From positions 205,134 to 269,133 of the IMG/VR virus record IMGVR_UViG_3300042549_005931: a DNA stretch of 64,000 nucleotides; one strand, written 5' to 3'. Each line of letters opens with the position of its first letter. Positions within the stretch are counted from its first letter, which is position 1. Below, one piece after another: positions 48,835-63,682 of this stretch. The notes below the pieces were generated by a model that had not been told where the DNA came from, searched no databases, and saw nothing but the letters and a program-made list of their open reading frames with translations. Made by a program: the position numbers and the translations under genes.

Positions 48835-49035
48835 TTAAAATTTTCCGGAAATTTTTTTTTCCGATATGGGGGTATATTGGATATTACCGGATTTTTTCCG
48901 GAAAAATTTTCATCGAGGTATTGTCCCCCCTATATAGACCCCCCAAAAAACACTATATAAGGGGGGATACGGGGAGGGGGGTCCCCCCCACATAGGGTGT
49001 AGGGGGTATGTCACCCCGGTAACGTTCCCCCACAG
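48835..49035. other. G/C-homopolymer palindromic element at the strand switch (candidate terminus/pac/origin)
   Basis: TTTTCCGGAAA palindromes; CCCCCCTATATAG/CTATATAAGGGGGG inverted repeat; G-tracts. Confidence 0.55.
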
Positions 49036-49139
49036 TTTAGGGCGTCCTATTCTTCAGACTCTGTAAAAAAATATTACCTTACCTATTGTATATTAAATTG
49101 TAATCAGTTATATTTGTGTGTACCAAATGTAATAATGAA

Positions 49140-49247
49140 ATGAGAAATCAAAAAAAGAGAGATATCTCTCACGACCTTTCCCTCGATGTTATCGGTGTAA
49201 CTATCTTGGGTATGATTGTATGTATGTTCTTATCCTTAATCCTTTAA
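49140..49247 (+). CDS. 35-aa TM peptide
   Basis: MRNQKKRDISHDLSLDVIGVTILGMIVCMFLSLIL*. Confidence 0.55.
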   Translation: MRNQKKRDISHDLSLDVIGVTILGMIVCMFLSLIL

Positions 49248-49251
49248 TGTT

Positions 49252-49440
49252 ATGATGAATAGTTTAAAAAAATCTTTGTTGTTTGGTGGGGTAATCATAT
49301 CCTTTATTGGAATTTTATATCACGTTATCCAAATGATATCAACGAATGAGTTTGTTCATTTTGTATGTTTCTTTTTATGGATGGTTATTAGTGGTGGTCT
49401 TGTCCTATGGTTTGGTCACGAAGAAAATAAGTATTCTTAG
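49252..49440 (+). CDS. small 2-TM protein
   Basis: Two hydrophobic segments. Confidence 0.65.
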   Translation: MMNSLKKSLLFGGVIISFIGILYHVIQMISTNEFVHFVCFFLWMVISGGLVLWFGHEENKYS

Positions 49441-49480
49441 TTCGATTTTTTGTGTTTAATTTTTGTTGTTAGCGATTTTT

Positions 49481-49515
49481 AAAAATCCCTCGGTCTTATA
49501 GGTCGGGGGATTTTT
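49481..49515 (+). terminator. intrinsic terminator (near-copy at 51049-51081)
   Basis: AAAAATCCCTCG-GTCTTATAGGT-CGGGGGATTTTT. Confidence 0.75.
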
Positions 49516-49928
49516 GTTTAAGGAGAATTCTCTACAAGGTTGTAAAGGTGAAAAACTTACCGGGACAATATACCCCGGTAACATATTTTCAGGAACCTGT
49601 TGGTGAGGTCATCGGAACCTTCCGATAGTGTAACGGGAACCTTCCGTAAATTACTCAACCTGGTAATGTTTATCACCCGGACGACCGGTTAATAATTTCT
49701 CAAAAAAAATGTAACCTGGTAATGTTTTCGTGAAGAGAAAAAGTTTTTTCTGTTTTCATTTTTCAACCTGGTAATGTTTTTAAACAAAAGGGGACGTCTG
49801 GTTTTTTTCTTATTTAGAATGAATATAAATTTCATGGGGGTATTGTGTATTCAAGATAAAATCGTTATATTTGTTCACGGTTTTAAAGTAAACCTCAACA
49901 TCGGAAATGGTTCCGAGTTGTCACTCTA

Positions 49929-50237
49929 ATGTTTAATGTTATGGTCTATACCAAAGAAATTATCCAAGAGAAGTTGTCATCAGACATTCGTTGGATTGAG
50001 AGAGGTGTTCTTGTTTTGTTCGGTCGTCAAACCGAGGATGAGAAATCTTCACAAGTTACCAAGTGGGAAAATGGTCGTGGGTTCAATAGTTCAGATAGTC
50101 GTTATCTGACTTATGTTTCAAAGTACCTAATGGGTGGTCGTCATCTATCGGGTAGACATCTTGAAAAGGTGTCCTTGAAGTTACCAAAGTATTGGAAACA
50201 GATTCAAGAAGAAATTCAATTAAAGGGGGGTAGTTAA
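49929..50237 (+). CDS. early phage protein (RQTEDE...NGRGFN motif)
   Basis: 102-aa ORF; no Ala. Confidence 0.75.
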   Translation: MFNVMVYTKEIIQEKLSSDIRWIERGVLVLFGRQTEDEKSSQVTKWENGRGFNSSDSRYLTYVSKYLMGGRHLSGRHLEKVSLKLPKYWKQIQEEIQLKGGS

Positions 50238-50711
50238 CCCCTCTTTTTTTGTGTCTGAAGTGAAAACTTTACCGGGATGATAACTTATATGGTTTAAGGA
50301 ATTATCGTGTCTTAAATCAAAGATTCATCCTGGTAAAGTTTGTCTGGTTCTCATCTGGTTTTTTTTCTGTGTGTTTGGTAATGTATCCTGGTAAACTTTT
50401 GTTTATTTTCCGGTCCGGATGTAACCTTACATCTATTGGTAATACAACCTGGTAAAGTTTATGGGACGAGAAAAAAAATATCATAATATTCTTGTTTTAT
50501 ATACCGGTTTGCCCTACCTTTGTATTGTACCAAATGAGATAATGAAATGAAATAGTCGAAACACAAACTGACAAATAAAAAATAAAAGAAGGAGATGAGG
50601 TTGTTAAAGTTTACCGGGTTGAAAAAGCTTCACCGGTCAGGAACCCTCATAACTTTACCAGGATAAATCCGTCTAAGAAGAAAACAATCACACATTAAAT
50701 TTATAAAACGT

Positions 50712-51023
50712 ATGTATATTACCTTAACTAATTCAAAGTCAAAAAGAAAAACTATTATCAATTGGGGACAAGTTCATTCTTGTTATGAGTTGTTGGATAG
50801 AGAAACGAGAAGTAGAGTAACTAAGATTAACTTTAGTAAAGATAGTTACATCATTGTATCGGAGAAGTTGGAGGACATCCACAAACTATTAACGAAATTA
50901 AACTTTGGTTTATCCCAAGATGTTGAGTGGGATAGTGAACCGAATTTCGATGAGGTTATCGAAGATGAGTATAACACGAACCGTAGAGGAAATTACCGGG
51001 AACGTGATTACAATAGATTTTAG
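50712..51023 (+). CDS. early hypothetical protein (possible FlbD-like small beta domain)
   Basis: YITLT...IIN...TKINF...YIIVSE; no Ala. Confidence 0.6.
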   Translation: MYITLTNSKSKRKTIINWGQVHSCYELLDRETRSRVTKINFSKDSYIIVSEKLEDIHKLLTKLNFGLSQDVEWDSEPNFDEVIEDEYNTNRRGNYRERDYNRF

Positions 51024-51255
51024 ATTGTCAAAAGAGTAGTGTAGATTAAAAACCCTCAATCTTATAGGTTGGGGGTTTTTTGTCGCCTTTAGAAAAAAGG
51101 TGTATTACACTATGGGGGTATTGTATTACACATAAGGGTCGTATTACGTATCCCGGTAAAATAAGGTACCAGGTCCTGACGGTCATGGTCTTGAAAATAA
51201 ATTTATTATGGAGTGTTGTATATTAAGAGAATAGTGTTATATTTGTGAGAACAAA

Positions 51256-51585
51256 ATGATAAATGATATGAGAACTTTTTCAAGAACTTACTACACAGAG
51301 AAACTGAACATTACGATTAGAATAAAAAGAGATGAATTATGTTCGATGGGTTGTCGATTGACAATAAAAGATAGAATGAAAAGAGATTATTGGGGTATGG
51401 ATAGAATTGTTTATTCACAATTTTACAACGATAAGAAGATGTTTACAAAATATCGGAGACAAATGATTGAAACAAAAGTACCGGGAAAGGTGGTTAATGA
51501 AATCATTGACGATATTAAGATGAACCTTAGGTTTGAAAAAGTTGTGGTGTATCAACCAATCGAAACAAAAATGTTTTGGGATTAA
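51256..51585 (+). CDS. early hypothetical protein
   Basis: 109-aa ORF; no Ala. Confidence 0.7.
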   Translation: MINDMRTFSRTYYTEKLNITIRIKRDELCSMGCRLTIKDRMKRDYWGMDRIVYSQFYNDKKMFTKYRRQMIETKVPGKVVNEIIDDIKMNLRFEKVVVYQPIETKMFWD

Positions 51586-51741
51586 TTACCGGGATTTTAT
51601 CCCGTATGAGGTTATCCCGGTAAATTAATGAACCGGGTCCTGACCCGGTCATGGTTGTTATTTAGAATCATTATAAATTTCATTGGGGTATTGTATATTA
51701 AATTAAAAGAGTTATATTTGTATCAATTAAATGATAATGAT

Positions 51742-52551
51742 ATGAAACTAAATGACAAATCCTTAATTAATGTATTGGACAGTAAAGGGTTCAAAGAACA
51801 CCATTTATCGTGGACACAAAAAAATGTTGAGTATTTTTTTACTCACTATGATAAGTTCATGGAAAAATATGGTGATGATAATATTTTTGAGAATTTTTCT
51901 TGTAAAGAGTATTTTTATTCACAAAAAGTTACAAGAAGATTAATTTTTTCAAAAAAGTCTTTGAGTAATTTGGATAACTACCAAGTACCAAAAGAAATAA
52001 GAGTGGAAGTATTAAGAACATTACCTAATCGAGTGGACTTGATACAATTAAATAATGATGAAGTAGTAAAGTATGTAAAAACCGATAAAATGGTTTGTGT
52101 TACTTTTAATATCGAAGATAACCATACTAATGAAATCAAAACGTTTTTCTTTTCAATCAATTTAGAAACGGGTTATGTTTCGTATGATAATTACGATTAT
52201 CAAACTAATAGAGAGATTGAGTTTAATGAAATGAAAGAAAAGTATTACAACAAGTTTATGGTTGTGGTTACTTATTTGGAATTAACCCCCGTTACTTATT
52301 CAATCATTGAGGGTCAAAGAAGTTACGGAACAAAGAAAGAAGATAAGGTAAAGAACGAAACAAATAAACGTTTCATTATGGTAAAAACTAATTGGAACGT
52401 GGAAACAATTAGTCTATTCGATATTCATGTTCGAGGTCATTGGAGATTACAACCTCACGGAGTAGGTCGTTCACAATACAAGTACATCTACATTCAACCT
52501 TTTGAAAAAGGTATTACAAGAAGATTATCACAAAGAGAGTTGGTTTCGTAA
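51742..52551 (+). CDS. early protein with C-terminal VRGHWR motif
   Basis: Restarted at MKLNDK; 269 aa; no Ala. Confidence 0.75.
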   Translation: MKLNDKSLINVLDSKGFKEHHLSWTQKNVEYFFTHYDKFMEKYGDDNIFENFSCKEYFYSQKVTRRLIFSKKSLSNLDNYQVPKEIRVEVLRTLPNRVDLIQLNNDEVVKYVKTDKMVCVTFNIEDNHTNEIKTFFFSINLETGYVSYDNYDYQTNREIEFNEMKEKYYNKFMVVVTYLELTPVTYSIIEGQRSYGTKKEDKVKNETNKRFIMVKTNWNVETISLFDIHVRGHWRLQPHGVGRSQYKYIYIQPFEKGITRRLSQRELVS

Positions 52552-52736
52552 CCAACTTTTTTTTTGTCCTGAGATGGAACAATTTACCGGGATGTTCTAA
52601 AAGTATTACGTCCCGGTAAACTAATTACCTGAGACTCATCTCAAGTTGGTCAAAAAAAAATTAAATTATTTTTTCATATTGTGTTGTATATTAATTTATT
52701 ATGACTTATATTTGTTCACACAAAACAAATAATGAA

Positions 52737-52940
52737 ATGGAAAAAGTTAATGTAGTCCAAACAAGGTACAAGAATCTCACTAATGGTATGAGAGGTACGT
52801 TCAAATTATCCGATGGTACACAAACCAAATTCGAGGTATTCGACAATGGGGAAGTGAAACAAACGGGTACAACCGAAGCTAATCTGTCGGTAACATTCCC
52901 ACACTTAATTGAGTTAGTTCACTTTTTCACCAACCAATAA
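52737..52940 (+). CDS. early hypothetical protein
   Basis: Restarted at MEKVNV. Confidence 0.65.
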   Translation: MEKVNVVQTRYKNLTNGMRGTFKLSDGTQTKFEVFDNGEVKQTGTTEANLSVTFPHLIELVHFFTNQ

Positions 52941-53033
52941 AAATGAAAAGTTTACCGGGGTGGTTAATAGAATTCATAGAATTCCTATTACTCTTATGTG
53001 TATTTATATCTTATTCAGTTAAACTTATCTATA

Positions 53034-53222
53034 ATGGAAAAGACACAACTAATCGGTAAGAGAATCCGAATCAATCACATGGACGACATGTTACCCGTAC
53101 CTGATGGGACAGAAGGGATAATTACCGGGATTGACGACATCGGACAAATACAAGTGAAATGGGATAATGGAAGTACCTTATCCGTAATAGATGATATTGA
53201 TGACTACGAAATCTTAAACTAA
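53034..53222 (+). CDS. DUF4314-like protein
   Basis: GTEGIITGIDDIGQIQVKWDNGSTL. Confidence 0.8.
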   Translation: MEKTQLIGKRIRINHMDDMLPVPDGTEGIITGIDDIGQIQVKWDNGSTLSVIDDIDDYEILN

Positions 53223-53395
53223 TGAACGAACAATTTGTAAAATACATAATGGATATGTTAGAAACTTATCCACAACATAGAAACGATATTCGAGATTTGT
53301 TCAGACTTTGTAAGGACGAAATTAGGGAGGGTGGTTCCCCACAACACGAAATGGACTTATGTCGTAATGACATTGAGGAGTTGGTGAAGGGTTAG
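53222..53395 (+). CDS. 57-aa early protein
   Basis: TAATG overlap; MNEQFVKYIM...ELVKG*. Confidence 0.65.
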   Translation: MNEQFVKYIMDMLETYPQHRNDIRDLFRLCKDEIREGGSPQHEMDLCRNDIEELVKG

Positions 53396-53558
53396 AAAGT
53401 TTACCGGGATAAAGTCTGTATTACTTGTCCCTATCGTATTACATCCTGGTAATATTTTTCCCATCTCCTCGATGAGTGGAGTAAAAAAAATATATCATAT
53501 AATACTTGTTAATATTATAATTGTTTTATAATTTTACTAAACAAAAAATGATATTATA

Positions 53559-54056
53559 ATGAAAAAAAATCAATTAAAAGGTATTTTTACTGAATTAAAT
53601 GAAACTATCACACGTAAGAGTGCATTTAATTCTTTTATTGAAACGGAGAACATTTCAACCGATGTTACTTTGGAAATGTCAAGAATTGGTCTCATTCGTA
53701 AAAATGCATATAAACAATTACAAGAATTAAAAACTGATTATATCAATCTGATTAACGACAAGAAGGTTAAAGAATTGTTTGAGAAGTTTGAGAAGTTAGA
53801 AACTGCAATTGTCCAACATAGAAGTATATTAGCGACAGAAGTTAAATTGGGTTTAATAAATCAAAAGAGAGGTAGAAGTGAAACAAGTTACGTAATTGCT
53901 CGAGCACCCTTCTATCACCCAAACAAAGTGAAATCAGAAATTTCTGTGTATTTAGGTAAGACCGAAATTTTAGGTAATGATTTGGTAAAGTTATCCAATG
54001 ACAATGAGTTTATGAAGAGAGCTGAATTAGAATTGGTTTCATCAATGTTGCGTTAA
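53559..54056 (+). CDS. hypothetical protein, compositional outlier
   Basis: 165 aa with 7 Ala, unlike its neighbours. Confidence 0.7.
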   Translation: MKKNQLKGIFTELNETITRKSAFNSFIETENISTDVTLEMSRIGLIRKNAYKQLQELKTDYINLINDKKVKELFEKFEKLETAIVQHRSILATEVKLGLINQKRGRSETSYVIARAPFYHPNKVKSEISVYLGKTEILGNDLVKLSNDNEFMKRAELELVSSMLR

Positions 54057-54271
54057 AGATATTGACAATAAAACTTTACCGGGACAACGTCCCAATATAG
54101 TTACATCCTGGTAAAGTATTTGGTGTCGTTACATCAGTCGGTTCTTCCTTATTTAGAATGATTATAAATTTCATTAAAGTATAAAAATATTTTAGGTTAT
54201 ATTAGTATAAGTCGTATTAAATGACGACCTTTGTTAAGTCGATAATGACACAGAACCTTAAAAGTTTTAAA

Positions 54272-54829
54272 ATGGAAACTTTAATGAATGAGAATGGTGT
54301 AATCACCAAAAATGATTTGGTCTTAATTACTAAGACACAAATGTTAGGTCTGTTTTTGGGAGTAACAAAACCCGAAATGATTAACTTGATAACGGAAACC
54401 AATGTAAAAACCAACAAAACGGGTAACCCCTATTACAAACAACTTGTGAAGAAGTCGAAGTGTAACTATTTGTTATGTTCGGATTATACTACAAGGGTAA
54501 ATAATAACCGAGTTAAAGAGGGTAAAGAAACGGATTTTGTTTCAGAAAAGTCAAGTGGTAAATTTCATATTTCCCCTTGTGTATTGATGGATGAAAAAAC
54601 ACAAACAAAACACTACCTAATGGTGGAGAGGTTTGTGGAGGTTAAACCAAAGGTTCAGTATTTTTTTAATGAAGAACCGATTGAGTTTGATATGTTCAAA
54701 CAATTCTTATCACCAATTAGTGAAAACAAATCACAAGGGTTGGATAGGAAAGTAATTGTAAATACTCCTTTGTTCGATTCGATTGTAGGATTCACTTTCA
54801 GAGGTCGTAAGTATAGTGTAATTGAGTAG
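54272..54829 (+). CDS. early hypothetical protein
   Basis: Restarted at METLMNE; no Ala. Confidence 0.72.
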   Translation: METLMNENGVITKNDLVLITKTQMLGLFLGVTKPEMINLITETNVKTNKTGNPYYKQLVKKSKCNYLLCSDYTTRVNNNRVKEGKETDFVSEKSSGKFHISPCVLMDEKTQTKHYLMVERFVEVKPKVQYFFNEEPIEFDMFKQFLSPISENKSQGLDRKVIVNTPLFDSIVGFTFRGRKYSVIE

Positions 54830-54856
54830 TTCGTTTTTTTCATAGTTTGGTGGTTA

Positions 54857-54888
54857 AAAGGGTAGGACAATGTTCTACCTTTTTTTTT
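54857..54888 (+). terminator. shared cassette terminator (near-copies at 56174, 57253, 60884)
   Basis: AAAAGGGTAGGACAATGTTCTACCTTTTTTTT. Confidence 0.8.
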
Positions 54889-55090
54889 GTCTGATGTTCT
54901 GAGATGGTAAAAGTTTACCGGGATAAGTTAAGTATTACACGGGGGACGAAGAAGACTGGAAAACTTTACCAGGATGGATTTGTCCCGGTAAATTTCCTAC
55001 CTGTCGTTACTGTGTCAGGATTTGTCAAAAAAAATTAAATCTTTTTTGGTATAAGTGTTGGAATTGTAATACCTATTTTGTAATTTAGAT

Positions 55091-55450
55091 ATGTCAAATA
55101 AAAACAATGATATGAATACGAAAACCGTTTACAATGTAATGAGAGGAATTGAACCTTTCACACAAAGAGAATTTGATGTTCACCAAACATTAAAAGTTCT
55201 AACCCACAACAAACTTATTTGGATAACGTGGGGAGTCAATCTTCGAAGTATCTGTGGACTTGAACGTAAGTGTCTTGTCTTCAAACCCAACGGACAATAT
55301 TTTAAAGACTTTGTCTGTGTAACTCTTGGATGGGATGATGTTTACCAGGTTCATTTTATGAACGACAAGTACAAAGTCGTTAAGTCAATTGAAGGTGTGT
55401 ACTTTGATATGTTGGTGGATGTGATTGACGGATACATTGAAACTCGATAA
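55091..55450 (+). CDS. early hypothetical protein
   Basis: 119-aa ORF; no Ala. Confidence 0.72.
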   Translation: MSNKNNDMNTKTVYNVMRGIEPFTQREFDVHQTLKVLTHNKLIWITWGVNLRSICGLERKCLVFKPNGQYFKDFVCVTLGWDDVYQVHFMNDKYKVVKSIEGVYFDMLVDVIDGYIETR

Positions 55451-55571
55451 TTTACCGGGAGGAGAAATCCTCCCGTTAACAAGAGCTACGGTACCAAACT
55501 TTACCGGGATAAAAATAAGTTTTGTAAAATGAAATTAATGTTATATCTTTGTAACCCAAACAAATGACACA

Positions 55572-56153
55572 ATGAATATTAGAGAAGAAAGAATTGACAA
55601 TTACATTTTGAGATTATTTTATGATGAGAGTCCGACGAATCCTCGAGAGGACTACAATCTTACCAGGATGGTGTGTTTCCACAAGAGATACGACTTGGGG
55701 GATAGTCACGACTACAAACACGATGACTACGATAGTTGGGATGAGATGGAGAAGAACATTACCAGGATGGAGAACCCTATTGTTATCAAACCCTTGTATA
55801 TGTACGAACATGGTGGAGTTACTATTAAGACAAGTCCGTTTGGTGATAGATGGGATAGTGGTCAAATTGGTTTTGTCTTTATCCGTAAGGATGATGTACG
55901 GAATGAATTCTCAATCAAGAGATGTGGTCAGAACATGGTGGAGAGATGTGATGTATTACTTGAAGGGGAGGTTGACGTGTATGACAAGTACCTACAAGGA
56001 CAAGTATATGGGTATGAGATAGGTAAAATAAATGAAGATGGTCAGGAAGAAGGTTTAGAAAGATGTGGAGATTATCTTGATGAAGACCAATGTGTTCACG
56101 ATGGAATGGTATCATTGAATTGGTTTAAAGAAAATGAGAAAGTATTGGTTTAG
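55572..56153 (+). CDS. early acidic protein (LYMYEHGG...RWDSGQIG motif)
   Basis: 193-aa ORF; no Ala. Confidence 0.75.
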   Translation: MNIREERIDNYILRLFYDESPTNPREDYNLTRMVCFHKRYDLGDSHDYKHDDYDSWDEMEKNITRMENPIVIKPLYMYEHGGVTIKTSPFGDRWDSGQIGFVFIRKDDVRNEFSIKRCGQNMVERCDVLLEGEVDVYDKYLQGQVYGYEIGKINEDGQEEGLERCGDYLDEDQCVHDGMVSLNWFKENEKVLV

Positions 56154-56398
56154 GTTTTCCTTATTATTGTTTAAAAGGGTAGGACGATGTTCTACCTTTT
56201 TTTTTGTATTACACTTGAGGAGTCTGAAGTCAGGACCTGAACCAAAAGTTTACCGGGATGAGATGTATTACCCCGGTAAAGTTATGAGTCGGAGAAAAAT
56301 TATTTGGTCTTCCAAAAAATAATTAAATTAATTTTTGACAAGTAGTAGGATATTAACTTACTATCAGTTATATTTGTGAACATTTAAACAATAATGAT

Positions 56399-56644
56399 AT
56401 GTCAGTACAACAAAAAGAAATGATTGAAAAGTGGGACAAGGTTTCACAAGATGTTTTGAAAGGTAGAACTATTGTAGAAGTTCGTTACCTTAACGATGAG
56501 GAAATGGAAATGATGGGTTGGTATAATAGACCAATTTGTTTTTTCTTGGACAATGGTGTTAGTTGTATCCTATCATCTGATGATGAGGGGAACGATGGTG
56601 GAGTTTTATTCTACGGAGAAAATGGAGTGTTACCAACCCTTTAA
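56399..56644 (+). CDS. early hypothetical protein
   Basis: 81-aa ORF; no Ala. Confidence 0.72.
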   Translation: MSVQQKEMIEKWDKVSQDVLKGRTIVEVRYLNDEEMEMMGWYNRPICFFLDNGVSCILSSDDEGNDGGVLFYGENGVLPTL

Positions 56645-56655
56645 ACAATAATGTT

Positions 56656-56871
56656 ATGTTAATTACAAGAACAAGTCAGATTTCAAGAACCGATTTTACA
56701 ATGGAGTTGGATATTACCTACGACCAATTGGATAGGATTAATAATCGTTACGAGACCAAAGAACTCATTCAGAACATTGTACCAAACTTGTCGAAGGAGG
56801 AACGGGAGTTTTTAATTACCGGGATAACCCCAAAAGAATGGAATGAATTGTTTAACCCAATTGATGTGTAA
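56656..56871 (+). CDS. early hypothetical protein
   Basis: 71-aa ORF; no Ala. Confidence 0.72.
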   Translation: MLITRTSQISRTDFTMELDITYDQLDRINNRYETKELIQNIVPNLSKEEREFLITGITPKEWNELFNPIDV

Positions 56872-56872
56872 A

Positions 56873-57013
56873 ATGGAAGTTAAAATCGAAGACCTTATCA
56901 AATTACTTGAAGAACAAGTTAGTAAGGGAGTAACCAAAGTACAACTTAATGGTACTTTAATGTCCGAAGAGGATGGTAACTTAATTATTTTGTCCACCGA
57001 AAAACAAATGTAA
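56873..57013 (+). CDS. 46-aa early protein
   Basis: MEVKIEDLIKLLEEQ...; fills the gap in the operon. Confidence 0.65.
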   Translation: MEVKIEDLIKLLEEQVSKGVTKVQLNGTLMSEEDGNLIILSTEKQM

Positions 57014-57014
57014 A

Positions 57015-57230
57015 ATGAAAGTAGTATCAGTCCGTATTACAGAACAACCAAAAGACTTGTTCGACCCACTACCAAGAGTATTCGTAACAACCGAAGATGG
57101 TGTGGAACATTTCCTTTACCAATATTACCCCGATGAGATTAGTTTCACGGAGAGTGAGTTGATGGGATTAACATTAGAAGAGTGTGGTAGATTATATACC
57201 GAGAAAGATATTAGATATTTGAGGTCGTAG
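57015..57230 (+). CDS. early hypothetical protein
   Basis: 71-aa ORF; no Ala. Confidence 0.72.
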   Translation: MKVVSVRITEQPKDLFDPLPRVFVTTEDGVEHFLYQYYPDEISFTESELMGLTLEECGRLYTEKDIRYLRS

Positions 57231-57540
57231 TGGTTTTTTTGTTTGTGGTTATAAAAGGGTGGGACAATGTTCCACCTTTTTTTATGGACTGAAGTCAGGA
57301 ATCTTCTGAGATGGAAAAGTTTACCGGGATGGTGGAGTGTATTACGTCCTGGTAATGTTTGTCTGGCGCAGCTCTGGTCCATCAGGTTATTTATCCCGGT
57401 AAACTTATGAGTCACAGAAAAATTCTTGGATGTTCCAAAAAAAATAATTGTTTTTTTTTCATATAACATTTGTAATTGTAATATTAATTGACTAATTTAG
57501 TGTTGTAGATAATGGTATCTACATTAACCCCTTTAATGTT

Positions 57541-57876
57541 ATGAGTACAATGGTAGTAAATCAAGAAGTCGAGTTTTCAATGGATGATATTGATAACGAG
57601 GTGTATTTTGAAATCACGGGTAAAATGGTTTTCAACGAGATTTTGGTTCAAGAAATTTTTGATGTGATTGTGGAATCGGATTGGTTCGTTCAAGGTAACA
57701 AGACCGAAGGTCTATTGTCAATCGGTCAGAGATTGAAAAATGGTATCGAGGTTAATCTCGATTGGAAGTCAATCACAATGGGTGAGGATTGGGATTCGGA
57801 TGAAACGGAAGAACACGAAAAGGATTTTATCCTATCGTGGGATGAGGATAATAAGATTGTCCTTACACCAAGGTAA
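57541..57876 (+). CDS. early acidic protein
   Basis: 111-aa ORF; no Ala. Confidence 0.72.
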   Translation: MSTMVVNQEVEFSMDDIDNEVYFEITGKMVFNEILVQEIFDVIVESDWFVQGNKTEGLLSIGQRLKNGIEVNLDWKSITMGEDWDSDETEEHEKDFILSWDEDNKIVLTPR

Positions 57877-58079
57877 TACGAAGGGAGAACGAAAGTTCTC
57901 CTTTTTTTTGTCCCTGATGGTAAAAGTTTACCGGGATACCCTGGTAAAGTTTTCTACCCGTCACTGTCGACAGGTGATAAAAATTAATTAATTTTTTTTG
58001 TTACAAGGTGTTGTTTATATCGAAAATTAAACTATCTTTGTGTGTGGATAATGGTGTCCACAATAATCCAATAAACAAA

Positions 58080-58988
58080 ATGGAAACACAACTCGTTTTA
58101 AATGACCGTATTACACAATTATTAGACCAAACCAACCTGAATTGGAAGGTGAAAGAATCACCTATCTATACTAAGGTAGATGACAATGAGATTTTAGTAT
58201 CAGATAAAAAAGTATTACTTCGTGAAGACACACACGAGATTTTAGGTTTACACTCTGATGGATATGTACCGTTCCAAAATTATGAGATGTTAGAATTACT
58301 TGATAAGGTTTCTCAACAAACGGGTTTACCAATTCATAGAGGTGGTTTGTTTGGTAACGGTAAGAAGGTGTATATCCAACTTCAATCACACGAGTTCAGA
58401 ATTCAGAATGTTGGTGGAGTTTGGGACACTATCTCAGGATATGTTACCGGGATAAACTCATTCGATGGTTCCACTTCATTATCATTTGGTCCTAGTACCA
58501 AAACAATCTCATGTCAAAATACTTTCTTTGGAGCTTATAAGGAAATGGGTACAAAGATTCGTCACACAAAAAACATGGGGGTAAAGATTGACGAGGTGTG
58601 TAGACGAATTGAAGGTGTGTTGGTAGAGGAGAGAAACAACTTCGAAAATATCAAGAAGATGTCTGAAAGTCCTTTTGAGATGAACACATTAGATTCTGTA
58701 ATACGAACTATGTTTGACCTTGACCGTAATGTGGATTTAAAAGATACTGATAAATTATCGGGGGTAACTCGTAATAAATTATCTCGATTCTATATCGACC
58801 TTAACGGTGAACTTCGTGAGAAGGGTAACAATGTTTGGGGATTGATGTCGGGTGTAACAAAATATACTACTCACTCTGTGATTAAGGGTGATAACTCCGA
58901 GAAAAAGATGTTTGGTAGTACGGGTAATCGTGAGAGAAAGATTTTCTCCGACCTTGTAAACTATACCAACCACTTGGAACTCGTTTAA
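58080..58988 (+). CDS. DUF932/DUF945-family protein
   Basis: LNWKV...LLREDT..ILG...YVPFQN...GKKVY...NSFDGS...TISCQNT; 1 Ala in 302 aa. Confidence 0.8.
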   Translation: METQLVLNDRITQLLDQTNLNWKVKESPIYTKVDDNEILVSDKKVLLREDTHEILGLHSDGYVPFQNYEMLELLDKVSQQTGLPIHRGGLFGNGKKVYIQLQSHEFRIQNVGGVWDTISGYVTGINSFDGSTSLSFGPSTKTISCQNTFFGAYKEMGTKIRHTKNMGVKIDEVCRRIEGVLVEERNNFENIKKMSESPFEMNTLDSVIRTMFDLDRNVDLKDTDKLSGVTRNKLSRFYIDLNGELREKGNNVWGLMSGVTKYTTHSVIKGDNSEKKMFGSTGNRERKIFSDLVNYTNHLELV

Positions 58989-58992
58989 GATT

Positions 58993-59160
58993 TGTTGTCG
59001 ATAGGTGAAAACCTAAATTAACTCACCGATGTCTTGGTGAGAGAAGAATAAGGATAAGTATTACAGGGTGTCCCTACCGACAATGTTGGACTTAAAATAT
59101 TCACCCCGTATTACCGAGTGTGGGAGGTTTTGTAAAATCATTAACCCACATCCTTATTAA
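58993..59160 (+). ncRNA. putative pseudoknotted RNA downstream of the DUF932 gene
   Basis: TTGTCG/CGACAA, TAGGT-GAAA-ACCTA, AATAAGGAT/ATCCTTATT, TGTGGG/CCCACA; terminator at 59168-59198. Confidence 0.5.
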
Positions 59161-59415
59161 AGACACTAAAACCCTCTACCCAACGGAGGGTTTTTTTATT
59201 GCCCTCAGGAACCTGAAGACAGGACCTGGGTGAAAAGTTTACCGGGATATCCTGGTAATGTTTCCACCATGCGCTGGAGCTGCGCTGTAATCGTCCCGGT
59301 AAAGTATTGGAGCTGCGCTGTACTGTGTTAATTAAAAAAATTATTTAACAAAGTAGTATGATATTAACTTAATAGTGTTATCTTTGTAAATCGTTTCACA
59401 TAAACAATAAATGAT

Positions 59416-59751
59416 ATGAAAAGTGGTAACATTGTGGATTTAAGTAACCTCGATACACGGGATTTAATCGAGGAGTTACAGAACAGGGGGTATATGACCG
59501 GTTTGTTATTTTGTAGGGAGGATGTAGACCTTCAACTTGAAAGTTTAAATGATGGGTATCGTGGTCTAAACCTTACCTTGACTGATGAGGAAAAGGACGA
59601 AATCCTTGAAGGAGACTTACCTATTGATTGGACTTGTGAAAGAATCAATGAGAGTATCTATGATGGTGTCTTTAATTTTTTCAGTGAGGAGATTAATAAG
59701 TGGGAGGAAAAAGATTTGGGTGAGAAGATGAGAAACGGATTTGGAAACTAA
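59416..59751 (+). CDS. early acidic protein
   Basis: 111-aa ORF; no Ala. Confidence 0.72.
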   Translation: MKSGNIVDLSNLDTRDLIEELQNRGYMTGLLFCREDVDLQLESLNDGYRGLNLTLTDEEKDEILEGDLPIDWTCERINESIYDGVFNFFSEEINKWEEKDLGEKMRNGFGN

Positions 59752-60031
59752 TAAATTACCAGGATATATGGAAACATTTCAATTTTACAAAGACGAAAAG
59801 ATGACGATTTGGTATCGTGGTAAGTTCGAGGTCGAAGCTAACTCGGAGGAGGAAGCTATCGAGATGGTTAAGGAACTTGAAAAGACAAATAAGTTAGATA
59901 ACTACGATGTTTATTGGGAAATTTTGGATGACACTATGGAAGGGTTAACGGTGGGAGATAATGGTGGTTATTCCACAGAAGAAATATACACAGGTAGTGG
60001 AGACATAATTTGGGCCAATGGAAAGGAATAG
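59741..60031 (+). CDS. early acidic protein
   Basis: FEVEANSEEEAIE motif. Confidence 0.72.
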   Translation: METNKLPGYMETFQFYKDEKMTIWYRGKFEVEANSEEEAIEMVKELEKTNKLDNYDVYWEILDDTMEGLTVGDNGGYSTEEIYTGSGDIIWANGKE

Positions 60032-60242
60032 TGTAATCAAGAAACTCAGGGACGGTGAACCATTGGAACTTTACCGGGATGGATTGTTCATTACTCTCCA
60101 ACTAAACAAACGACATAAAAGAATTTGTTGGGAACGATGGGTATCTGTTAACAAAACCTCTTGGATGAATTGGAATTTATTCTTATCTTTACGGGACGTA
60201 ATACAAATCTATAATGATTATGAAAAAAGAAAAACTGATTAA
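60018..60242 (+). CDS. early hypothetical protein
   Basis: Overlapping operon ORF. Confidence 0.65.
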   Translation: MERNSVIKKLRDGEPLELYRDGLFITLQLNKRHKRICWERWVSVNKTSWMNWNLFLSLRDVIQIYNDYEKRKTD

Positions 60243-60543
60243 GAAAATCCAACAGGTGTTGGATGACTTGGACACTCGTAGTATTAATGTACATGAGTTA
60301 GACACGGAATCATCGATTAACATTGGTGATTTGGCCAACGGTGATATAACGGAATGTGTAGAAACACTTCGTTACGATGATGTATCCACCATAGTTTACC
60401 ACAACGGTAACGAGATAGAGTGGAGTGATAAAGATTACCGGGACTTACCTCTCAATACATTAGAGGAAATCCTTGAAGCTTTACAATACTATAAAATAGG
60501 TTTTGACAAAACATTAGACGTAATACGAGATGAAAACTATTAA
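60220..60543 (+). CDS. early acidic protein
   Basis: Overlapping operon ORF, restarted at MKKEKL. Confidence 0.68.
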   Translation: MKKEKLIKKIQQVLDDLDTRSINVHELDTESSINIGDLANGDITECVETLRYDDVSTIVYHNGNEIEWSDKDYRDLPLNTLEEILEALQYYKIGFDKTLDVIRDENY

Positions 60544-60823
60544 AACGATTGACCAAATTATTTCAGAGAGTGTAGAAGAGCACGTACTAACTTGTATTGA
60601 CCGGGTTAATAAGGGATTTAAAGTTGTAGAGGTTGAGGTTCCATTAGAATATTCATCCAAAGTGTTTACCTTACTAAACGATGAGATTAGTTATGGTGTT
60701 AGAATGTATGGGTGGAAGTTCGGAGTTTTCTCACAGGGAGAGTTCGAAGGTAAGATGGCTCAAACTATTTTAAAAGAAAACAATAGAGTGTTTAAAAGAT
60801 ATTTTTTAAAATACACTTTATAA
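60530..60823 (+). CDS. early hypothetical protein
   Basis: Overlapping operon ORF. Confidence 0.68.
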   Translation: MKTIKTIDQIISESVEEHVLTCIDRVNKGFKVVEVEVPLEYSSKVFTLLNDEISYGVRMYGWKFGVFSQGEFEGKMAQTILKENNRVFKRYFLKYTL

Positions 60824-61090
60824 TTTGTAAGATGTTACTTATATTTTGATTACAAATTATTTGTGTTCATATTTTGTGTTTGGGAAAAGGGTTGGCAGAA
60901 ATGTCAACCTTTTTTTGTGCTCGTGTATTACCTGTGCACTGTACCTGCACAGCAGTGAAGTTTACCGGGACAACCTGGTAATGTATTACCTGCAGCAACT
61001 GCAGAGCCTTCAGGTAAAAAAAGTTATTAAATAATGTTTGTTATATTGAAAACTATTTTGTAATTTTAATCCATCAAATAAACAAATGAT

Positions 61091-61858
61091 ATGGAATTTA
61101 AAAACTTAACACAAACAAAAAAGGATTTAGGACTTAACTATTTAGGTTCGGTTAGTAAAACCACCAAACATATTAAGTCAATTGAGTACAACGAATTGGT
61201 TTACACTATCTACTTGTCACCTGCAGACAGTAGTGGGTATGAGGTGTGTCCATTACGAAACGACGAATGTACCGACCTTTGCCTTAATGAGTCCGGTATG
61301 AACCGAATGAGTATGAATGACGAATTGATTAATAGAAGTCGTATCAAAAAAACTAAATTGTTTTTTGAGAACCGTGAATACTTTGTCAAGTGGATGGTAT
61401 ACGAAATCGAATCCACCAAACTAAAAGCTGAAAAACTTGGTATGAGTTTTAGTGTACGTATCAATAATACTTCAGACATTAATCCTTTATCATTTTATCT
61501 TGAAGTTAACGGAAAAAAATTAAATGTATTGGATTTATTCCCCGATGTACAATTTTACGATTATACAAAAGTTCCCAACCGAATGAAGTTAATGATGTTA
61601 TATCCTAATTACGATTTGACATTTTCTTATGACGGTTATAATAAAGATACTTGTCTACAGATGTTAGAAAATAATGTTAGGGTGGCCGTTGTGTTTGATA
61701 AGTTACCGGGAGAATTATGGGGGTACAAAGTTATCGATGGTGACTTGTATGACATGAGATATCGAGATGAGAAAAATGTAATTGTCGGACTGAAGTTCAA
61801 ACGAGTTCGAAAGAAACTACATAAGGATTATAAGTTCGTAATACAAAACCCACAATGA
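61091..61858 (+). CDS. GP88-like protein (Cys-motif, radical-SAM-like)
   Basis: EVCP...CTDLCL...VRINNTSD...QFYDYTK...YDLTFS...IDGD...VGLKFK. Confidence 0.78.
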   Translation: MEFKNLTQTKKDLGLNYLGSVSKTTKHIKSIEYNELVYTIYLSPADSSGYEVCPLRNDECTDLCLNESGMNRMSMNDELINRSRIKKTKLFFENREYFVKWMVYEIESTKLKAEKLGMSFSVRINNTSDINPLSFYLEVNGKKLNVLDLFPDVQFYDYTKVPNRMKLMMLYPNYDLTFSYDGYNKDTCLQMLENNVRVAVVFDKLPGELWGYKVIDGDLYDMRYRDEKNVIVGLKFKRVRKKLHKDYKFVIQNPQ

Positions 61859-62108
61859 TGTGGGTTTTTTTATGCACTCAGGAATCTGAAGGCAGGACCT
61901 GGATGAAAAGTTTACCGGGATATCCTGGTAAAGTTCCATTTGGGAAACACAGCAGCGCAAAACCATCCCGGTAAAGTTTCCCTGGCAACAACAGCAGCGC
62001 TGACTTCAGAAAAAAAATTAAAATATTTTTTACCTATGTGTTGTGATTTAGTAAAAATGTATTATCTTTGTACAAGTAATAAGTCAAACAATTTAAACTT
62101 TTAATGTT

Positions 62109-62657
62109 ATGGGATTAGATATGTATCTATCGAAAAAGACCTATGTTAAACAATGGTCACACGACAAACCCGAAGAACAATTCGAGGTGTCTGTTAAACG
62201 AGGTGGTAAACCTTTCAAGAAAATCGAATCAAGTCGGGTTTCTTATGTTACGGAAGAATTGATGTATTGGAGAAAAGCCAATCAGATTCATGGATGGTTT
62301 GTACACAACACACAGGAAATTGTGGAGGAAGTCAAATACTATGTAACCAAAGAAGATTTGGATAACTTACTTGATGTTTGTAAACAAGTATTGGATGTTA
62401 TGAGTAAGTCCAAGATGAAGACAGTCCAAGTTCGTAGTGGTTGGAGTGGTGGTGAGGAAACTTATTCCGATGTTGAAACTTACGATTGTGAGGATGAGAT
62501 TAGAGAATTACTCCCACCAACAGAAGGATTCTTCTATGGTTCTTACGAGATTGATGAGTGGTATAAACAAGCCATCGAGGAAACTGTGGAGTTCTTGGAA
62601 AAAGAATTACCAAAGTCCGATGAACACGATGACTTCGAGTATTACGCGAGTTGGTAA
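62109..62657 (+). CDS. conserved phage protein (MGLDMY...YWRKANQIHGWF motif)
   Basis: 182-aa ORF with a recognisable phage motif. Confidence 0.75.
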   Translation: MGLDMYLSKKTYVKQWSHDKPEEQFEVSVKRGGKPFKKIESSRVSYVTEELMYWRKANQIHGWFVHNTQEIVEEVKYYVTKEDLDNLLDVCKQVLDVMSKSKMKTVQVRSGWSGGEETYSDVETYDCEDEIRELLPPTEGFFYGSYEIDEWYKQAIEETVEFLEKELPKSDEHDDFEYYASW

Positions 62658-62719
62658 TATAAAAAAATAATCGGGATATCGTTTGGAATAATGGTATCCC
62701 TTTTATAATTTTGTAAACG

Positions 62720-62968
62720 ATGAAAGATTTATTCAATAATTCAAGACCAGTTCAGATTGAAATCGGTGAATGGTGGTTCAACGGGAGATTCATCCAAAAA
62801 CAGGTGCATCCGTTGCTTAGTCCTTATGTATCCTTTAATGATAATGAGGATGGTTATATGGTTCAAACTCACACAACCTTTAAGGAAGCAACTAAGTATT
62901 GTTTGGATAATCCTTGTAATACCCCACAACACCAACCAAAAGATTTTATAAGTTCATTTAAAAACTAA
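62720..62968 (+). CDS. hypothetical protein
   Basis: 82-aa ORF; TAATTTTG upstream. Confidence 0.65.
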   Translation: MKDLFNNSRPVQIEIGEWWFNGRFIQKQVHPLLSPYVSFNDNEDGYMVQTHTTFKEATKYCLDNPCNTPQHQPKDFISSFKN

Positions 62969-62974
62969 TATCAT

Positions 62975-63682
62975 ATGCCCAATTGGTGTAGTAACTATAT
63001 TACGATTTCGGGAGAGGAATCTAATATGAAACCCTTATACGATTTTTTTCGTGAAGGTGAAGAAATAGTCGAAACGTATTACAAACAATTCAGAGAATTC
63101 CGTGAGAACTTTCCTGATGAGGACGCGTTTAACTCAATAGGTATGAAAGAGGTATTCGTTATGTCTACCCTTGTACCTGAGGATGAGGAATTTGAAAAGA
63201 TTAAAGAGAGTGGTCAATATCTGTTATCACCTTACACAGAATTTTGGGGTTGTAAGTGGGACATCCATATTCACGACGGACTAATCACTGAGTGTACTCC
63301 AACAAAGATTCAATTATCACCAATAACCGCTTGGTCACCACCTGAACCATTCTGTAAAAGATTGTCAAAGAAGTATGGTGTTGATGTGGAGATTAGTTTT
63401 TTCGAGGGTGGAGCTAACTTCGCTGGTCGTAGTCGTTTTTCAAACGGAAAAGAAATCGAGAGTGTAATGTATACCTATCGTGAAGGGATGTATTACTTGG
63501 AAACTGAAATTTTTTGGGGGGAGACCTATAGTGATTTAGAATGGATGTTCTGTGAAAATCCAAATATCACATTCGACGAAGTGTTAGGACAGATGTACCC
63601 TTTCGTTAAAGATGAGAATGATATAAAAGAATTAAACGAACTCTATCATAATTTTAAAGTAGATGAAACAACAGGAGAATAA
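62975..63682 (+). CDS. YubB/DUF1281-like ferredoxin-fold protein
   Basis: MPNWCSN...WGCKWD...TAWSPP...FFEGG..FAG. Confidence 0.78.
   Translation: MPNWCSNYITISGEESNMKPLYDFFREGEEIVETYYKQFREFRENFPDEDAFNSIGMKEVFVMSTLVPEDEEFEKIKESGQYLLSPYTEFWGCKWDIHIHDGLITECTPTKIQLSPITAWSPPEPFCKRLSKKYGVDVEISFFEGGANFAGRSRFSNGKEIESVMYTYREGMYYLETEIFWGETYSDLEWMFCENPNITFDEVLGQMYPFVKDENDIKELNELYHNFKVDETTGE

What the first reader, a model, noticed from the sequence alone, without database searches (positions are those of the whole stretch)
49083..62100. About 16 self-contained promoter-gene-terminator cassettes with reused flanks
Seen: a repeating unit of Bacteroidota promoter, 1-5 small genes, intrinsic terminator and a motif-rich spacer of roughly 50-250 bp. 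Terminators are near-copies (54857, 56174, 57253, 60884; 49481 and 51049). Post-promoter leaders repeat (GTACCAAATG..ATAATGAAATGA at about 49120 and 50527), as do spacer words (CTGAAG.CAGGA, CTGAGATGG, GTATTAC). Known: the SPO1 host-takeover module and T4-type PeSL elements have a similar logic. Inference: a recombination-driven, integron-like array of anti-host genes.
Basis: partly seen in the sequence, partly recalled or inferred. Interest (0 to 1): 0.62.

Follow-up and report, generated by a model that had tools for sequence, protein, structure and literature searches.

The report
Shuffled early-gene cassettes of a jumbo phage
This is the early-gene region of a T4-related jumbo phage of a Bacteroidota host, built from about 17 small promoter-gene-terminator units whose reused flanks are the points where relatives have gained, lost, swapped and reordered genes; every unit also carries a lineage-specific DNA motif about 90 bases upstream of its promoter.

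Summary
From window 49.08 kb to the contig end there are about 17 plus-strand units. Each has a Bacteroidota-type promoter (TAnnTTTG), 1-5 small genes that are mostly of unknown function, an intrinsic terminator and a motif-rich spacer with near-copy flanks.

The window is the last 64 kb of a 269-kb T4-type jumbo phage contig. In relatives the array runs about 3-3.5 kb further.

TTACCRGG (full form AAAnTTTACCRGGAT, called M here) occurs 54 times in the window, all within the array, against about 3 expected. M usually forms inverted arms, several of them around GTATTAC. In 15 of 16 units an arm lies 67-103 nt upstream of the promoter box.

I recovered related arrays from metagenomes. Shared genes are mostly 71-99% identical, yet cassettes are absent, replaced by unrelated genes or reordered. 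Several junctions fall exactly in M arms, promoters or terminators.

Seven lineages keep the same spacer layout but each has its own arm sequence.

Best reading: a Bacteroidota counterpart of the T4-type PeSL regulatory cassettes, plus a previously undescribed promoter-coupled cis element that probably binds a co-evolving phage factor. It is not an integron in mechanism. The "anti-host" content is plausible but untested.

The parts
48870..49080 (+). Conserved non-coding head element with G/C runs and nested inverted repeats, ending in the first M arm (49015, minus orientation), which lies 94 nt upstream of the first promoter box.
   Evidence: More than 90% identical to the relative R1 although non-coding, and synteny to its left is broken. 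It is also recognisable at the array head in L255 and L256.
49075..49518 (+). Unit 1: box 49109; two small membrane-like genes, 49140-49247 and 49252-49440; terminator 49481-49518.
49557..49774 (.). Cluster of M arms (49557 plus; 49574, 49659, 49715 and 49767 minus) with 52-56 bp spacing. The relative R1 has about 20 arms in the same place.
49830..50252 (+). Unit 2: box 49866; gene 49929-50237 (102 aa, phrog_21015, called g102 here); terminator 50222-50252. It is followed by an M cluster (50269 plus; 50329, 50387 and 50448 minus).
   Evidence: g102 homologues sit near the head of every related array found.
50480..51082 (+). Unit 3: box 50515; a leader copying that of unit 1; M arms at 50611 and 50655 (plus); gene 50712-51023; terminator 51048-51082.
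51205..51650 (+). Unit 4: box 51238; gene 51256-51585; M pair 51586/51616; palindrome 51632-51649. Absent from R1, present in L160.
51680..52566 (+). Unit 5: box 51713; gene 51742-52551 (269 aa); terminator 52538-52566. In R1 and L160 an unrelated 70-aa gene occupies this slot.
52675..53458 (+). Unit 6: box 52707; genes 52737-52940, 53034-53222 (its homologues in relatives carry a DUF4314 hit) and 53222-53395; M pair 53401/53445. The last gene is replaced by an unrelated 49-aa gene in R1.
53459..54090 (+). Unit 7: box 53529 (one mismatch); gene 53559-54056. The whole cassette is absent from R1 and L160, and the junction lies in the M minus arm.
   Evidence: alignment A1
54165..54888 (+). Unit 8: box 54198 (one mismatch); gene 54221-54829 (202 aa, called g202 here, conserved in all 8 arrays); terminator 54856-54888.
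55035..55476 (+). Unit 9: variant box at about 55069; gene 55091-55450; M plus arm at 55452 fused to hairpin 55459-55476.
55510..56205 (+). Unit 10: box 55544; gene 55572-56153 (phrog_6186); terminator 56173-56205.
56335..57283 (+). Unit 11: box 56369; four genes between 56399 and 57230; terminator 57251-57283. In L255 this operon lies after the homologues of units 14-15.
57465..57909 (+). Unit 12: box 57498 (one mismatch); gene 57541-57876; terminator 57880-57909. The window, R1 and L158 carry three unrelated genes in this slot between conserved flanks.
58000..59197 (+). Unit 13: box 58033; gene 58080-58988 (DUF932); terminator 59168-59197.
59345..60916 (+). Unit 14: box 59379; five genes between 59416 and 60823; terminator 60885-60916. 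Gene 59768-60031 is a divergent allele (about 49% aa identity to R1), and the drop in identity begins at the M arm at 59756.
61020..61871 (+). Unit 15: variant box at about 61054; gene 61091-61858 (GP88, PF17338); terminator 61845-61871.
62030..62704 (+). Unit 16: box 62063; gene 62109-62657; terminator 62673-62704.
62706..64000 (+). Unit 17, cut by the contig end: box 62706; genes 62720-62968 (absent in R1 and L178, present in L183), 62975-63682 (DUF1281_C; two allele classes) and 63663-63938; M arm at 63951.
49015..63958 (.). The M motif, AAAnTTTACCRGGAT: 54 copies of its core (31 plus, 23 minus). Spacers typically run terminator, optional CTGAAGNCAGGA word, M plus arm, optional GTATTAC, M minus arm, optional second M minus arm, short variable hairpin, A-tract, promoter.

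Best explanation
The region is the early, hyperplastic accessory-gene region of a T4-superfamily jumbo myovirus that infects a Bacteroidota host.

Shown. About 17 short transcription units lie head to tail on one strand. Each has a host-type promoter (a TTG-containing -33 region and a TAnnTTTG -7 box), a short A-rich leader, 1-5 small genes and an intrinsic terminator. The flanks are repeated along the array. Among relatives, whole units or single genes have been deleted, inserted, replaced by unrelated genes and moved. Junctions lie in the repeated flanks, namely the M arms, promoter boxes, and the leader or terminator. This is the pattern described for PeSL cassettes of T4-type coliphages, here built on Bacteroidota transcription signals.

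Also shown. An 11-15 nt motif (M) is confined to the array. It evolves more slowly than its surroundings. In 15 of 16 units an arm sits 67-103 nt upstream of the promoter box. It is usually paired with an inverted copy, and several pairs enclose GTATTAC. In seven lineages the layout and the arm-to-promoter distance are kept while the arm sequence differs.

Inferred. M is the recognition site of a sequence-specific, phage-encoded factor that co-evolves with it and controls all early promoters together, most simply by shutting them off after the early phase. As the longest identical stretch in every spacer, M also acts as the preferred crossover point for the phage's own homologous recombination.

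Confidence by layer. Cassette architecture and recombinational shuffling: about 0.85. M as a promoter-coupled site bound in trans: about 0.55. Repressor or shutoff function specifically: about 0.35.
For: Identity of the phage. The window is the last 64 kb of a 269,133-bp virus contig. The contig encodes a T4-type Gp23 capsid protein (211.7 bits), a tail sheath, an SbcC-like nuclease, a DNA polymerase and a ribonucleotide reductase.

Units and signals.

M is confined to the array: 54 of 54 copies in the window and 54 of 59 in the genome.

Conservation between the window and relative R1. M positions inside genes are 98.8% identical and M positions between genes 91.5%, against 76.7% at third codon positions and 80.3% in other intergenic DNA. 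Of the third-codon positions inside M, 28 of 29 are unchanged.

Position. An M minus arm lies 67-103 nt (mean 90, sd 9) before the -7 box at 15 of 16 promoters. The median is 86-97 nt in seven lineages.

Lineage-specific arms. The cores are TTTACCRGGAT (window), TTTACTAGGAT, TTGACCGGGG, TTGTTTGGCAA, CAATTGGCG, TTTCTGTGGCG and TTTTGTCTGGA.

Cassette differences among relatives.

Junctions in M arms. The 53459-54090 cassette indel. The right border of the swap in the unit 5 slot. A duplicated or deleted arm at 57343-57390, and two arm-plus-flank modules in opposite order at 59250-59330.

Known precedent: PeSL papers PMC2839356 and PMC4122927.
Against: No transcript, protein-binding or read-level data could be obtained, so promoter use, termination and any trans factor are inferred.

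No DNA-binding protein was identified. The two genes conserved in all arrays, g102 and g202, gave confident or fair models but no significant structural match.

M copies inside coding sequence are all in the sense orientation: 10 to 0 in the window, 15 to 0 in R1, 3 to 0 in L255. A simple double-strand operator does not predict this.

The spacing between arms varies from 4 to 57 nt, which is unusual for a dimeric operator.

Conservation of M could partly reflect gene conversion among copies rather than selection.

Some junctions lie at promoters, start codons or terminators, not at M.
Confidence: 0.7

Rival explanations
1. A true site-specific cassette system, in effect a phage integron. In this reading the M inverted repeats at the 3' side of each cassette are attC-like sites cut and rejoined by a dedicated recombinase or nuclease, and that activity moves the cassettes.
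For: Four junctions map inside M arms. The palindromes have variable loops (4-57 nt) and lie at cassette borders. Arm sequence is lineage-specific, as expected for a co-evolving enzyme and site. Two arm-plus-flank modules stand in opposite order in two phages.
Against: The 269-kb contig has no tyrosine recombinase, although it is only about 81% complete. Every cassette has its own promoter and terminator. Other junctions fall at promoter boxes, start codons and terminators. The arm keeps a fixed distance to the promoter, which a recombination site does not need. T4-type homologous recombination between repeats explains the same pattern (PMC2839356).
Confidence: 0.12
2. The M and GTATTAC hairpins act as folded nucleic acid, not as protein sites on duplex DNA. 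They could be RNA processing or stabilising sites in read-through transcripts, back-up terminators or insulators between units, or hairpins extruded from single-stranded DNA.
For: They lie 19-46 nt behind the terminators (positions read). Copies inside genes are sense-oriented only. In the window the left arm is mostly G and the right arm mostly T at the degenerate position, which gives G-T or G-U pairs on the plus strand. GTATTAC is strongly biased to the plus strand.
Against: All four base combinations occur at the degenerate position, including A-C mismatches, and some orthologous pairs flip from G-T to A-C. L255 pairs carry a T-C mismatch. All hairpins in one genome share the same arms, which structure alone would not require. 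Single arms occur in tandem arrays without partners. The constant distance is to the promoter, not to the terminator. No Rfam family matched.
Confidence: 0.12
3. The M arms are iteron-like or centromere-like sites of a replication origin or of a DNA-segregation or compaction system. This system would be centred on the head of the array, and the copies at promoters would be secondary.
For: The head of the array holds dense tandem arm clusters with 52-61 bp spacing on both sides of the conserved g102 gene: 9 arms in the window and about 20 in R1, with the same layout but a different arm in L255. A conserved G/C-run palindromic element lies just upstream. The L255 array encodes a weak ParB_N-like protein.
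Against: Most copies are spread over about 17 kb, with one set per promoter at a fixed distance. No replication initiator or partition ATPase was found in the array. T4-type phages are not known to need partition (established knowledge).
Confidence: 0.06

Closest known systems
PeSL (promoter-early stem-loop) regulatory cassettes of T4-type phages (RB49/phi1, T4/PST, KVP40/nt-1; PMC2839356, PMC4122927)
   Same: The phage belongs to the T4 superfamily. Small composite elements combine a strong host-type early promoter, an A/T-rich upstream tract and a terminating stem-loop. They are concentrated in a hyperplastic region of small genes of unknown function. Insertions, deletions and replacements between close relatives end in these elements.
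   Different: The promoters are Bacteroidota -33/-7 type, not sigma-70 -35/-10, and there is no Shine-Dalgarno sequence. The terminator and promoter are separated by a 100-250 nt spacer. That spacer carries an extra element, lineage-specific inverted arms often around GTATTAC, at a fixed distance from the promoter; the PeSL papers I read do not describe such an element. Mini-circles could not be tested.
SPO1 host-takeover module (from my own knowledge of the literature, not tested here)
   Same: A contiguous block of many short early operons, each with its own promoter and terminator, encoding small proteins. Some of those proteins redirect the host.
   Different: No sequence relationship was found. 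The SPO1 module lies in the terminal redundancy, and the ends of this genome are unknown. SPO1 uses Bacillus sigma-A promoters. No host-takeover function is shown for any gene here.
Integron cassette arrays (IntI, attI, attC)
   Same: A one-directional array of small, exchangeable genes. Imperfect palindromes with variable centres lie at cassette borders. Gene content varies among relatives.
   Different: No integrase was found. The cassettes carry their own promoters and terminators. The arm consensus is unrelated to attC core sites. The arms are positioned relative to promoters.
Dispersed operator sets of a single global regulator on mobile elements, such as phage P1 C1 operators or RK2 KorB operators (analogy from my own knowledge)
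   Same: Many copies of one 12-17 bp site, single or in inverted pairs, lie upstream of many promoters of one replicon. Their specificity differs between related elements.
   Different: No regulator has been identified here. The site density is far higher (54 copies in 15 kb). Copies occur inside genes in one orientation only.

Membership tests
PeSL-type regulatory cassettes of T4-type phages | The host genome is a T4-superfamily myovirus. | tested here: met
   Gp23 major capsid protein (PF07068), 211.7 bits. Tail sheath phrog_23, SbcC-like nuclease, DNA polymerase and ribonucleotide reductase. The sheath's closest isolates are distant T4-like or jumbo myoviruses.
PeSL-type regulatory cassettes of T4-type phages | A repeated composite of a host-type early promoter with an A/T-rich upstream tract plus a terminating stem-loop, in intergenic positions. 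| tested here: met
   12 of 17 units have a perfect TAnnTTTG box, and A-tracts lie upstream. Terminator-like sites number 29 against 9.3 expected. Repeat families D4, D7, D10-D13. Function was not measured.
PeSL-type regulatory cassettes of T4-type phages | The promoter matches the E. coli sigma-70 -35/-10 consensus and is followed by a Shine-Dalgarno sequence. | tested here: not met
   Sigma-70-like sites are not enriched (63 against 64.9). The boxes are Bacteroidota -7 type and the leaders are A-rich without a Shine-Dalgarno sequence. This reflects the host; it is not a difference in logic.
PeSL-type regulatory cassettes of T4-type phages | Concentrated in a hyperplastic region of small genes of unknown function. 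| tested here: met
   Of the 20 array genes scanned, 3 have a Pfam domain above cut-off, and the PHROG hits are all 'unknown function'. 29 array genes were called in all.
PeSL-type regulatory cassettes of T4-type phages | Insertions, deletions and replacements between close relatives end in the elements. | tested here: met
   At least 8 cassette-level differences from R1, L160, L158, L178 and L183. Junctions lie in M arms, at promoter boxes, and at the leader or terminator.
PeSL-type regulatory cassettes of T4-type phages | Excised mini-circles formed by exchange between neighbouring elements. | not testable with these tools
Integron | An IntI-type tyrosine recombinase encoded with the array. 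| tested here: not met
   No PF00589 match at E <= 0.1 in the 269-kb contig, while the control genomes all matched. Caveat: the contig is about 81% complete.
Integron | Promoterless cassettes expressed from a common promoter. | tested here: not met
   Each unit has its own promoter box and most have their own terminator.
Integron | attC sites: imperfect palindromes with conserved core and inverse-core at each cassette's 3' end. | tested here: inconclusive
   Imperfect palindromes with variable centres do lie at cassette borders. However, their consensus is unrelated to attC cores, they differ by lineage, and they are tied to the promoter.
SPO1-type host-takeover module | Located in the terminal redundancy of the genome. 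| not testable with these tools
   The contig is linear with no end repeats and about 81% complete, and the array runs off its end.
SPO1-type host-takeover module | Genes homologous to known host-takeover genes. | tested here: not met
   None of the 20 array proteins scanned hit a PHROG family in the host-takeover category.

The most novel reading that the evidence does not exclude
The inverted arms, often enclosing GTATTAC, about 90 nt upstream of the early promoters would be a previously undescribed control or mobilisation system of T4-related Bacteroidota jumbo phages. A phage-encoded factor whose DNA specificity drifts together with some 50 dispersed sites per genome would either switch the whole early programme or catalyse cassette exchange. 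The arm differs in all seven lineages, and polymorphic intermediates are visible: G/A at one position in this phage and T/G in L255.
Probability: 0.3. Interest if true: 0.8.

Novelty: new variant of a known kind. Interest (0 to 1): 0.62.

Why it matters
Early regions are where phages keep their anti-host and anti-defence genes, and almost nothing is known about them in phages of Bacteroidota.

This array shows that the PeSL principle is not confined to T4-like phages of Proteobacteria. In that principle the transcription signals also serve as recombination handles, so genes can be swapped as ready-to-express units. The same principle has been rebuilt here on a different promoter grammar.

The array also gives a defined set of about 30 small early genes in this phage, with many alternative genes in the same slots in relatives, for anti-defence screens.

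The lineage-specific, promoter-coupled motif is a clean, testable case of concerted co-evolution between a cis element present in dozens of copies and an unknown factor. If that factor is found, it would explain how these phages time their early programme.

Tried and rejected
Searches for relatives that found nothing.
- Megablast of the array against 50,697 phage records: no match.
- Exact 15-mer scan of IMG/VR: only single, chance-level hits.
- Protein-based locus searches with three array or flank proteins in IMG/VR: nothing.
- A 245-kb relative (G001, 66% sheath identity) has no M cluster and no homologue of any array gene; it is 74% complete, so its early region is probably missing.
- A palindrome scan of 185,579 prokaryote genomes gave no Bacteroidota pattern suggesting a host regulator site; the multi-hit record is an unrelated repeat in a Peptococcaceae MAG.

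Ideas tested and dropped.
- M as a CCNGG restriction or methylation decoy: CCNGG is at about the expected density outside the array.
- M as the -35-like part of a composite promoter: no conserved element lies at a fixed distance downstream of M.
- Hairpin covariation at the degenerate arm position: all four base combinations occur.
- MotA-type activator, RNA polymerase beta subunit, integrase: no hits. The MotCF model matched none of the control genomes either, so that blank is uninformative.
- Terminase_6C: no hit.
- Rfam: no family in the region.

Structure searches.
- g102 (pLDDT 90.7): best Foldseek E-value 1.7, best VIA Z-score 4.5.
- g202 (pLDDT 76.5): best Foldseek E-value 0.07.
- No fold assignment results, so there is no support for or against DNA binding.

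Not possible. 

Full report
**Context**

The window is bases 205134-269133, the last 64 kb, of a 269,133-bp IMG/VR virus contig. The contig is classed as linear and about 81% complete. It encodes a T4-type Gp23 capsid protein (PF07068, 211.7 bits), a tail sheath, an SbcC-like nuclease, a DNA polymerase and a ribonucleotide reductase. It is therefore a T4-superfamily jumbo myovirus. No isolate is close to it. GC content is about 32%. The promoter grammar described below points to a Bacteroidota host.

**The observation**

From 49.08 kb to the contig end all genes are on the plus strand.

- Twelve first genes have a perfect TAnnTTTG box 10-55 nt before the ATG. The rest have a one-mismatch box or a CTATTTTGTAAT variant. 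The background rate is 0.78 boxes per kb per strand.
- Sigma-70-type promoters are not enriched: 63 found against 64.9 expected.
- Terminator-like hairpins are enriched: 29 found against 9.3 +/- 3.0.

TTACCRGG occurs 54 times in the window, all between 49015 and 63958, against 3.1 expected. That is 54 of the 59 copies in the whole contig. The full consensus is AAAnTTTACCRGGAT in both orientations, and nothing is conserved at a fixed distance downstream of it. I call this motif M.

A typical spacer reads, in order:

- terminator
- optional CTGAAGNCAGGA word
- M in plus orientation
- optional GTATTAC
- M in minus orientation, sometimes followed by a second minus copy
- a short hairpin of variable sequence
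- an A-tract
- the promoter

At 15 of 16 promoters the last minus-oriented M lies 67-103 nt (mean 90, sd 9) before the -7 box. The distance from the plus-oriented M to the box ranges from 43 to 309 nt.

Tandem clusters of single arms, 52-61 bp apart, flank the second unit's gene, g102.

Ten copies lie inside coding sequence, in all three reading frames (frames worked out from the coordinates). All ten are sense-oriented.

**Relatives**

An exact scan of metagenome contigs for the M palindrome recovered several related pieces:

- A 23.5-kb contig (loci L162 plus L195, read in reverse complement and called R1 here).
- L183, L160, L158, L178 and L168.

All carry M at 2-6 copies per kb. R1 is 77-94% identical in DNA across the aligned blocks of the array and its left flank, and collinear within the array. 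In R1 and L183 the array runs 3-3.5 kb beyond our contig end. That stretch includes a C5 DNA methyltransferase, and the array ends at convergent minus-strand genes.

Between the window and R1, M positions are 98.8% identical inside genes and 91.5% between genes. This compares with 76.7% at third codon positions and 80.3% in other intergenic DNA. Of the third-codon positions inside M, 28 of 29 are unchanged.

**Cassette variation**

Shared genes are mostly 71-99% identical in protein, yet the arrays differ by whole cassettes.

- Unit 7 (53459-54090) is absent from R1 and L160. The single spacer in those relatives is left-like up to the minus M arm and right-like after it (alignment A1).
- The slot of units 4-5 holds a 109-aa plus a 269-aa gene in the window, the 109-aa gene plus an unrelated 70-aa gene in L160, and only the 70-aa gene in R1. 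The left border is at the -7 box and the right border at the minus M arm.
- Gene 57541-57876 is replaced by unrelated genes in R1 and in L158, between the conserved leader and terminator.
- Gene 53222-53395 is replaced by an unrelated gene in R1.
- Gene 62720-62968 is present in L183 but absent in R1 and L178.
- Genes 59768-60031 and 62975-63682 are divergent alleles. For the first, the drop in identity begins at an M arm.
- Inside spacers, one arm is duplicated or deleted at 57343-57390, and two arm-plus-flank modules stand in opposite order at 59250-59330.
- R1 has about 1.1 kb of extra arm repeats after unit 1.
- In a more distant array (L255), the homologues of unit 11 lie after those of units 14-15, so cassette order also differs.

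**A conserved layout with lineage-specific arms**

The 102-aa product of unit 2 (g102, phrog_21015) has 42 homologues. In every contig I fetched, the homologue sits near the head of a one-directional array of small genes, next to the switch from minus-strand genes.

The spacers of those arrays have the same layout, and GTATTAC lies between the arms in examples from every lineage. The arms, however, differ in each lineage:

| Locus | g102 identity to the window | Arm core |
|---|---|---|
| window and R1 | 100% / 85% | TTTACCRGGAT |
| L259 | 79% | TTTACTAGGAT |
| L255 | 75% | TTGACCGGGG |
| L256 | 61% | TTGTTTGGCAA |
| L260 | 62% | CAATTGGCG |
| L257 | 54% | TTTCTGTGGCG |
| L261 | 54% | TTTTGTCTGGA |

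In all seven lineages the right arm lies a median 86-97 nt before the -7 box.

Mixed states exist within single genomes: G/A at one arm position in the window, and T/G at another in L255. Arm copies inside genes are common only in the window lineage and are few or absent elsewhere.

Only g102 and the 202-aa gene g202 (54221-54829) are present in all eight arrays.

**Interpretation**

Two things are shown: the architecture, and its reshuffling at reused flanks. The closest known system is the PeSL cassette of T4-type coliphages and vibriophages. PeSLs combine a strong host-type promoter, an A/T-rich tract and a terminating stem-loop. They cluster in hyperplastic regions of genes of unknown function and mark the end points of insertions, deletions and replacements (PMC2839356, PMC4122927). 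This array is a variant built on Bacteroidota signals.

The M and GTATTAC element is additional to what those papers describe. Three observations bear on what it is:

- All copies in a genome share one sequence.
- The sequence differs by lineage.
- The position relative to the promoter is conserved while the intervening sequence is not.

The simplest reading is a recognition site on duplex DNA for a phage-encoded factor that acts on all early promoters. Base-pairing alone would not require identical arms. The A-C and T-C mismatches, and the G-T to A-C flips between orthologous pairs, argue against selection for a plus-strand hairpin.

Which factor binds, and whether it represses or activates, is inference. 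g102 and g202 gave no fold match.

As the longest shared stretch in each spacer, M is also where non-allelic homologous exchange would be expected to resolve. The phage encodes an SbcC-like nuclease and a weak RecA/UvsX-like hit below the Pfam cut-off.

The sense-only orientation of M copies inside genes remains unexplained.

**Rivals**

- A dedicated site-specific, integron-like system is not excluded but lacks a recombinase, and it does not explain the coupling to promoters.
- An RNA or single-strand hairpin role fits the orientation bias but not the mismatches or the unpaired tandem arms.
- An origin or centromere role could apply to the head cluster only.

**Limits**

The host is unknown. 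'Anti-host' content rests on three domain hits (DUF932, GP88, DUF1281_C) and on the methyltransferase in relatives.

Noticed in passing
whole contig G000 (269,133 bp), including the window: GATC is completely absent: 0 sites, against roughly 800 expected from base composition (my estimate). It is also absent from the 245-kb relative G001 and from loci L255, L256, L259 and L261. L257 has 46 sites and L260 has 34. This points to strong, lineage-dependent avoidance of a GATC-specific host restriction system.
   Followed up: partly
window 92-5468 and 10336-10737: A cluster of 14 tRNA genes and a phage-encoded tmRNA (tag peptide ending ...SNVAVA), all on the plus strand.
   Followed up: no
window 48870-49080: A conserved non-coding element at the head of the array, with C6/G6/C7 runs and nested inverted repeats. 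It is more than 90% identical in R1 and recognisable in L255 and L256, and gene order to its left is rearranged between relatives. It could be an origin, a packaging or end-related site, or a G-quadruplex-forming signal.
   Followed up: partly
L162:2381-3295 (minus) and L183:4061-5029 (minus), about 0.2-1.3 kb beyond the window's end by homology: Relatives carry a C5 cytosine DNA methyltransferase (PF00145, E about 1e-30) inside the array, in the part our contig lacks.
   Followed up: partly
L259:1130-1351; L255:5283-6029; L260:12378-12444: Related arrays encode a 73-aa protein with an RNA polymerase alpha C-terminal domain hit (PF03118) near the array head, and a 248-aa protein with a weak ParB_N hit. 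A weak GIY-YIG hit lies next to another array. The alpha-CTD-like protein is notable because every promoter has an A-tract where an UP element would lie.
   Followed up: no
window 17675-26136: A minus-strand block of glycosyltransferase and methyltransferase genes plus a dehydrogenase. It includes a 784-aa protein with methyltransferase and glucosyltransferase PHROG hits and a 417-aa glycosyltransferase (phrog_24687, E 7e-172). It may act in DNA or surface-sugar modification.
   Followed up: no
L260 and L261 promoters, e.g. L261:10594, 10997, 13396: In two distant lineages GTATTAC directly overlaps the -7 box (GTATTACCTTTG, which contains TACCTTTG). The heptamer found between the arms may therefore be related to the promoter box itself.
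   Followed up: no
G000:C1:8721-8945: A second, short Gp23-like open frame (138 aa, 55.8 bits) lies far from the main capsid gene at 174.6-176.0 kb.
   Followed up: no
window 53559-54056; L162:3343-3750, L183:5077-5484 and L168:2305-2712 (all minus): The gene of the cassette found only in this phage (unit 7) has a 32-34% identical paralogue. In relatives the paralogue lies just past the window's end, and our contig holds its first 28 codons at the very end.
   Followed up: partly
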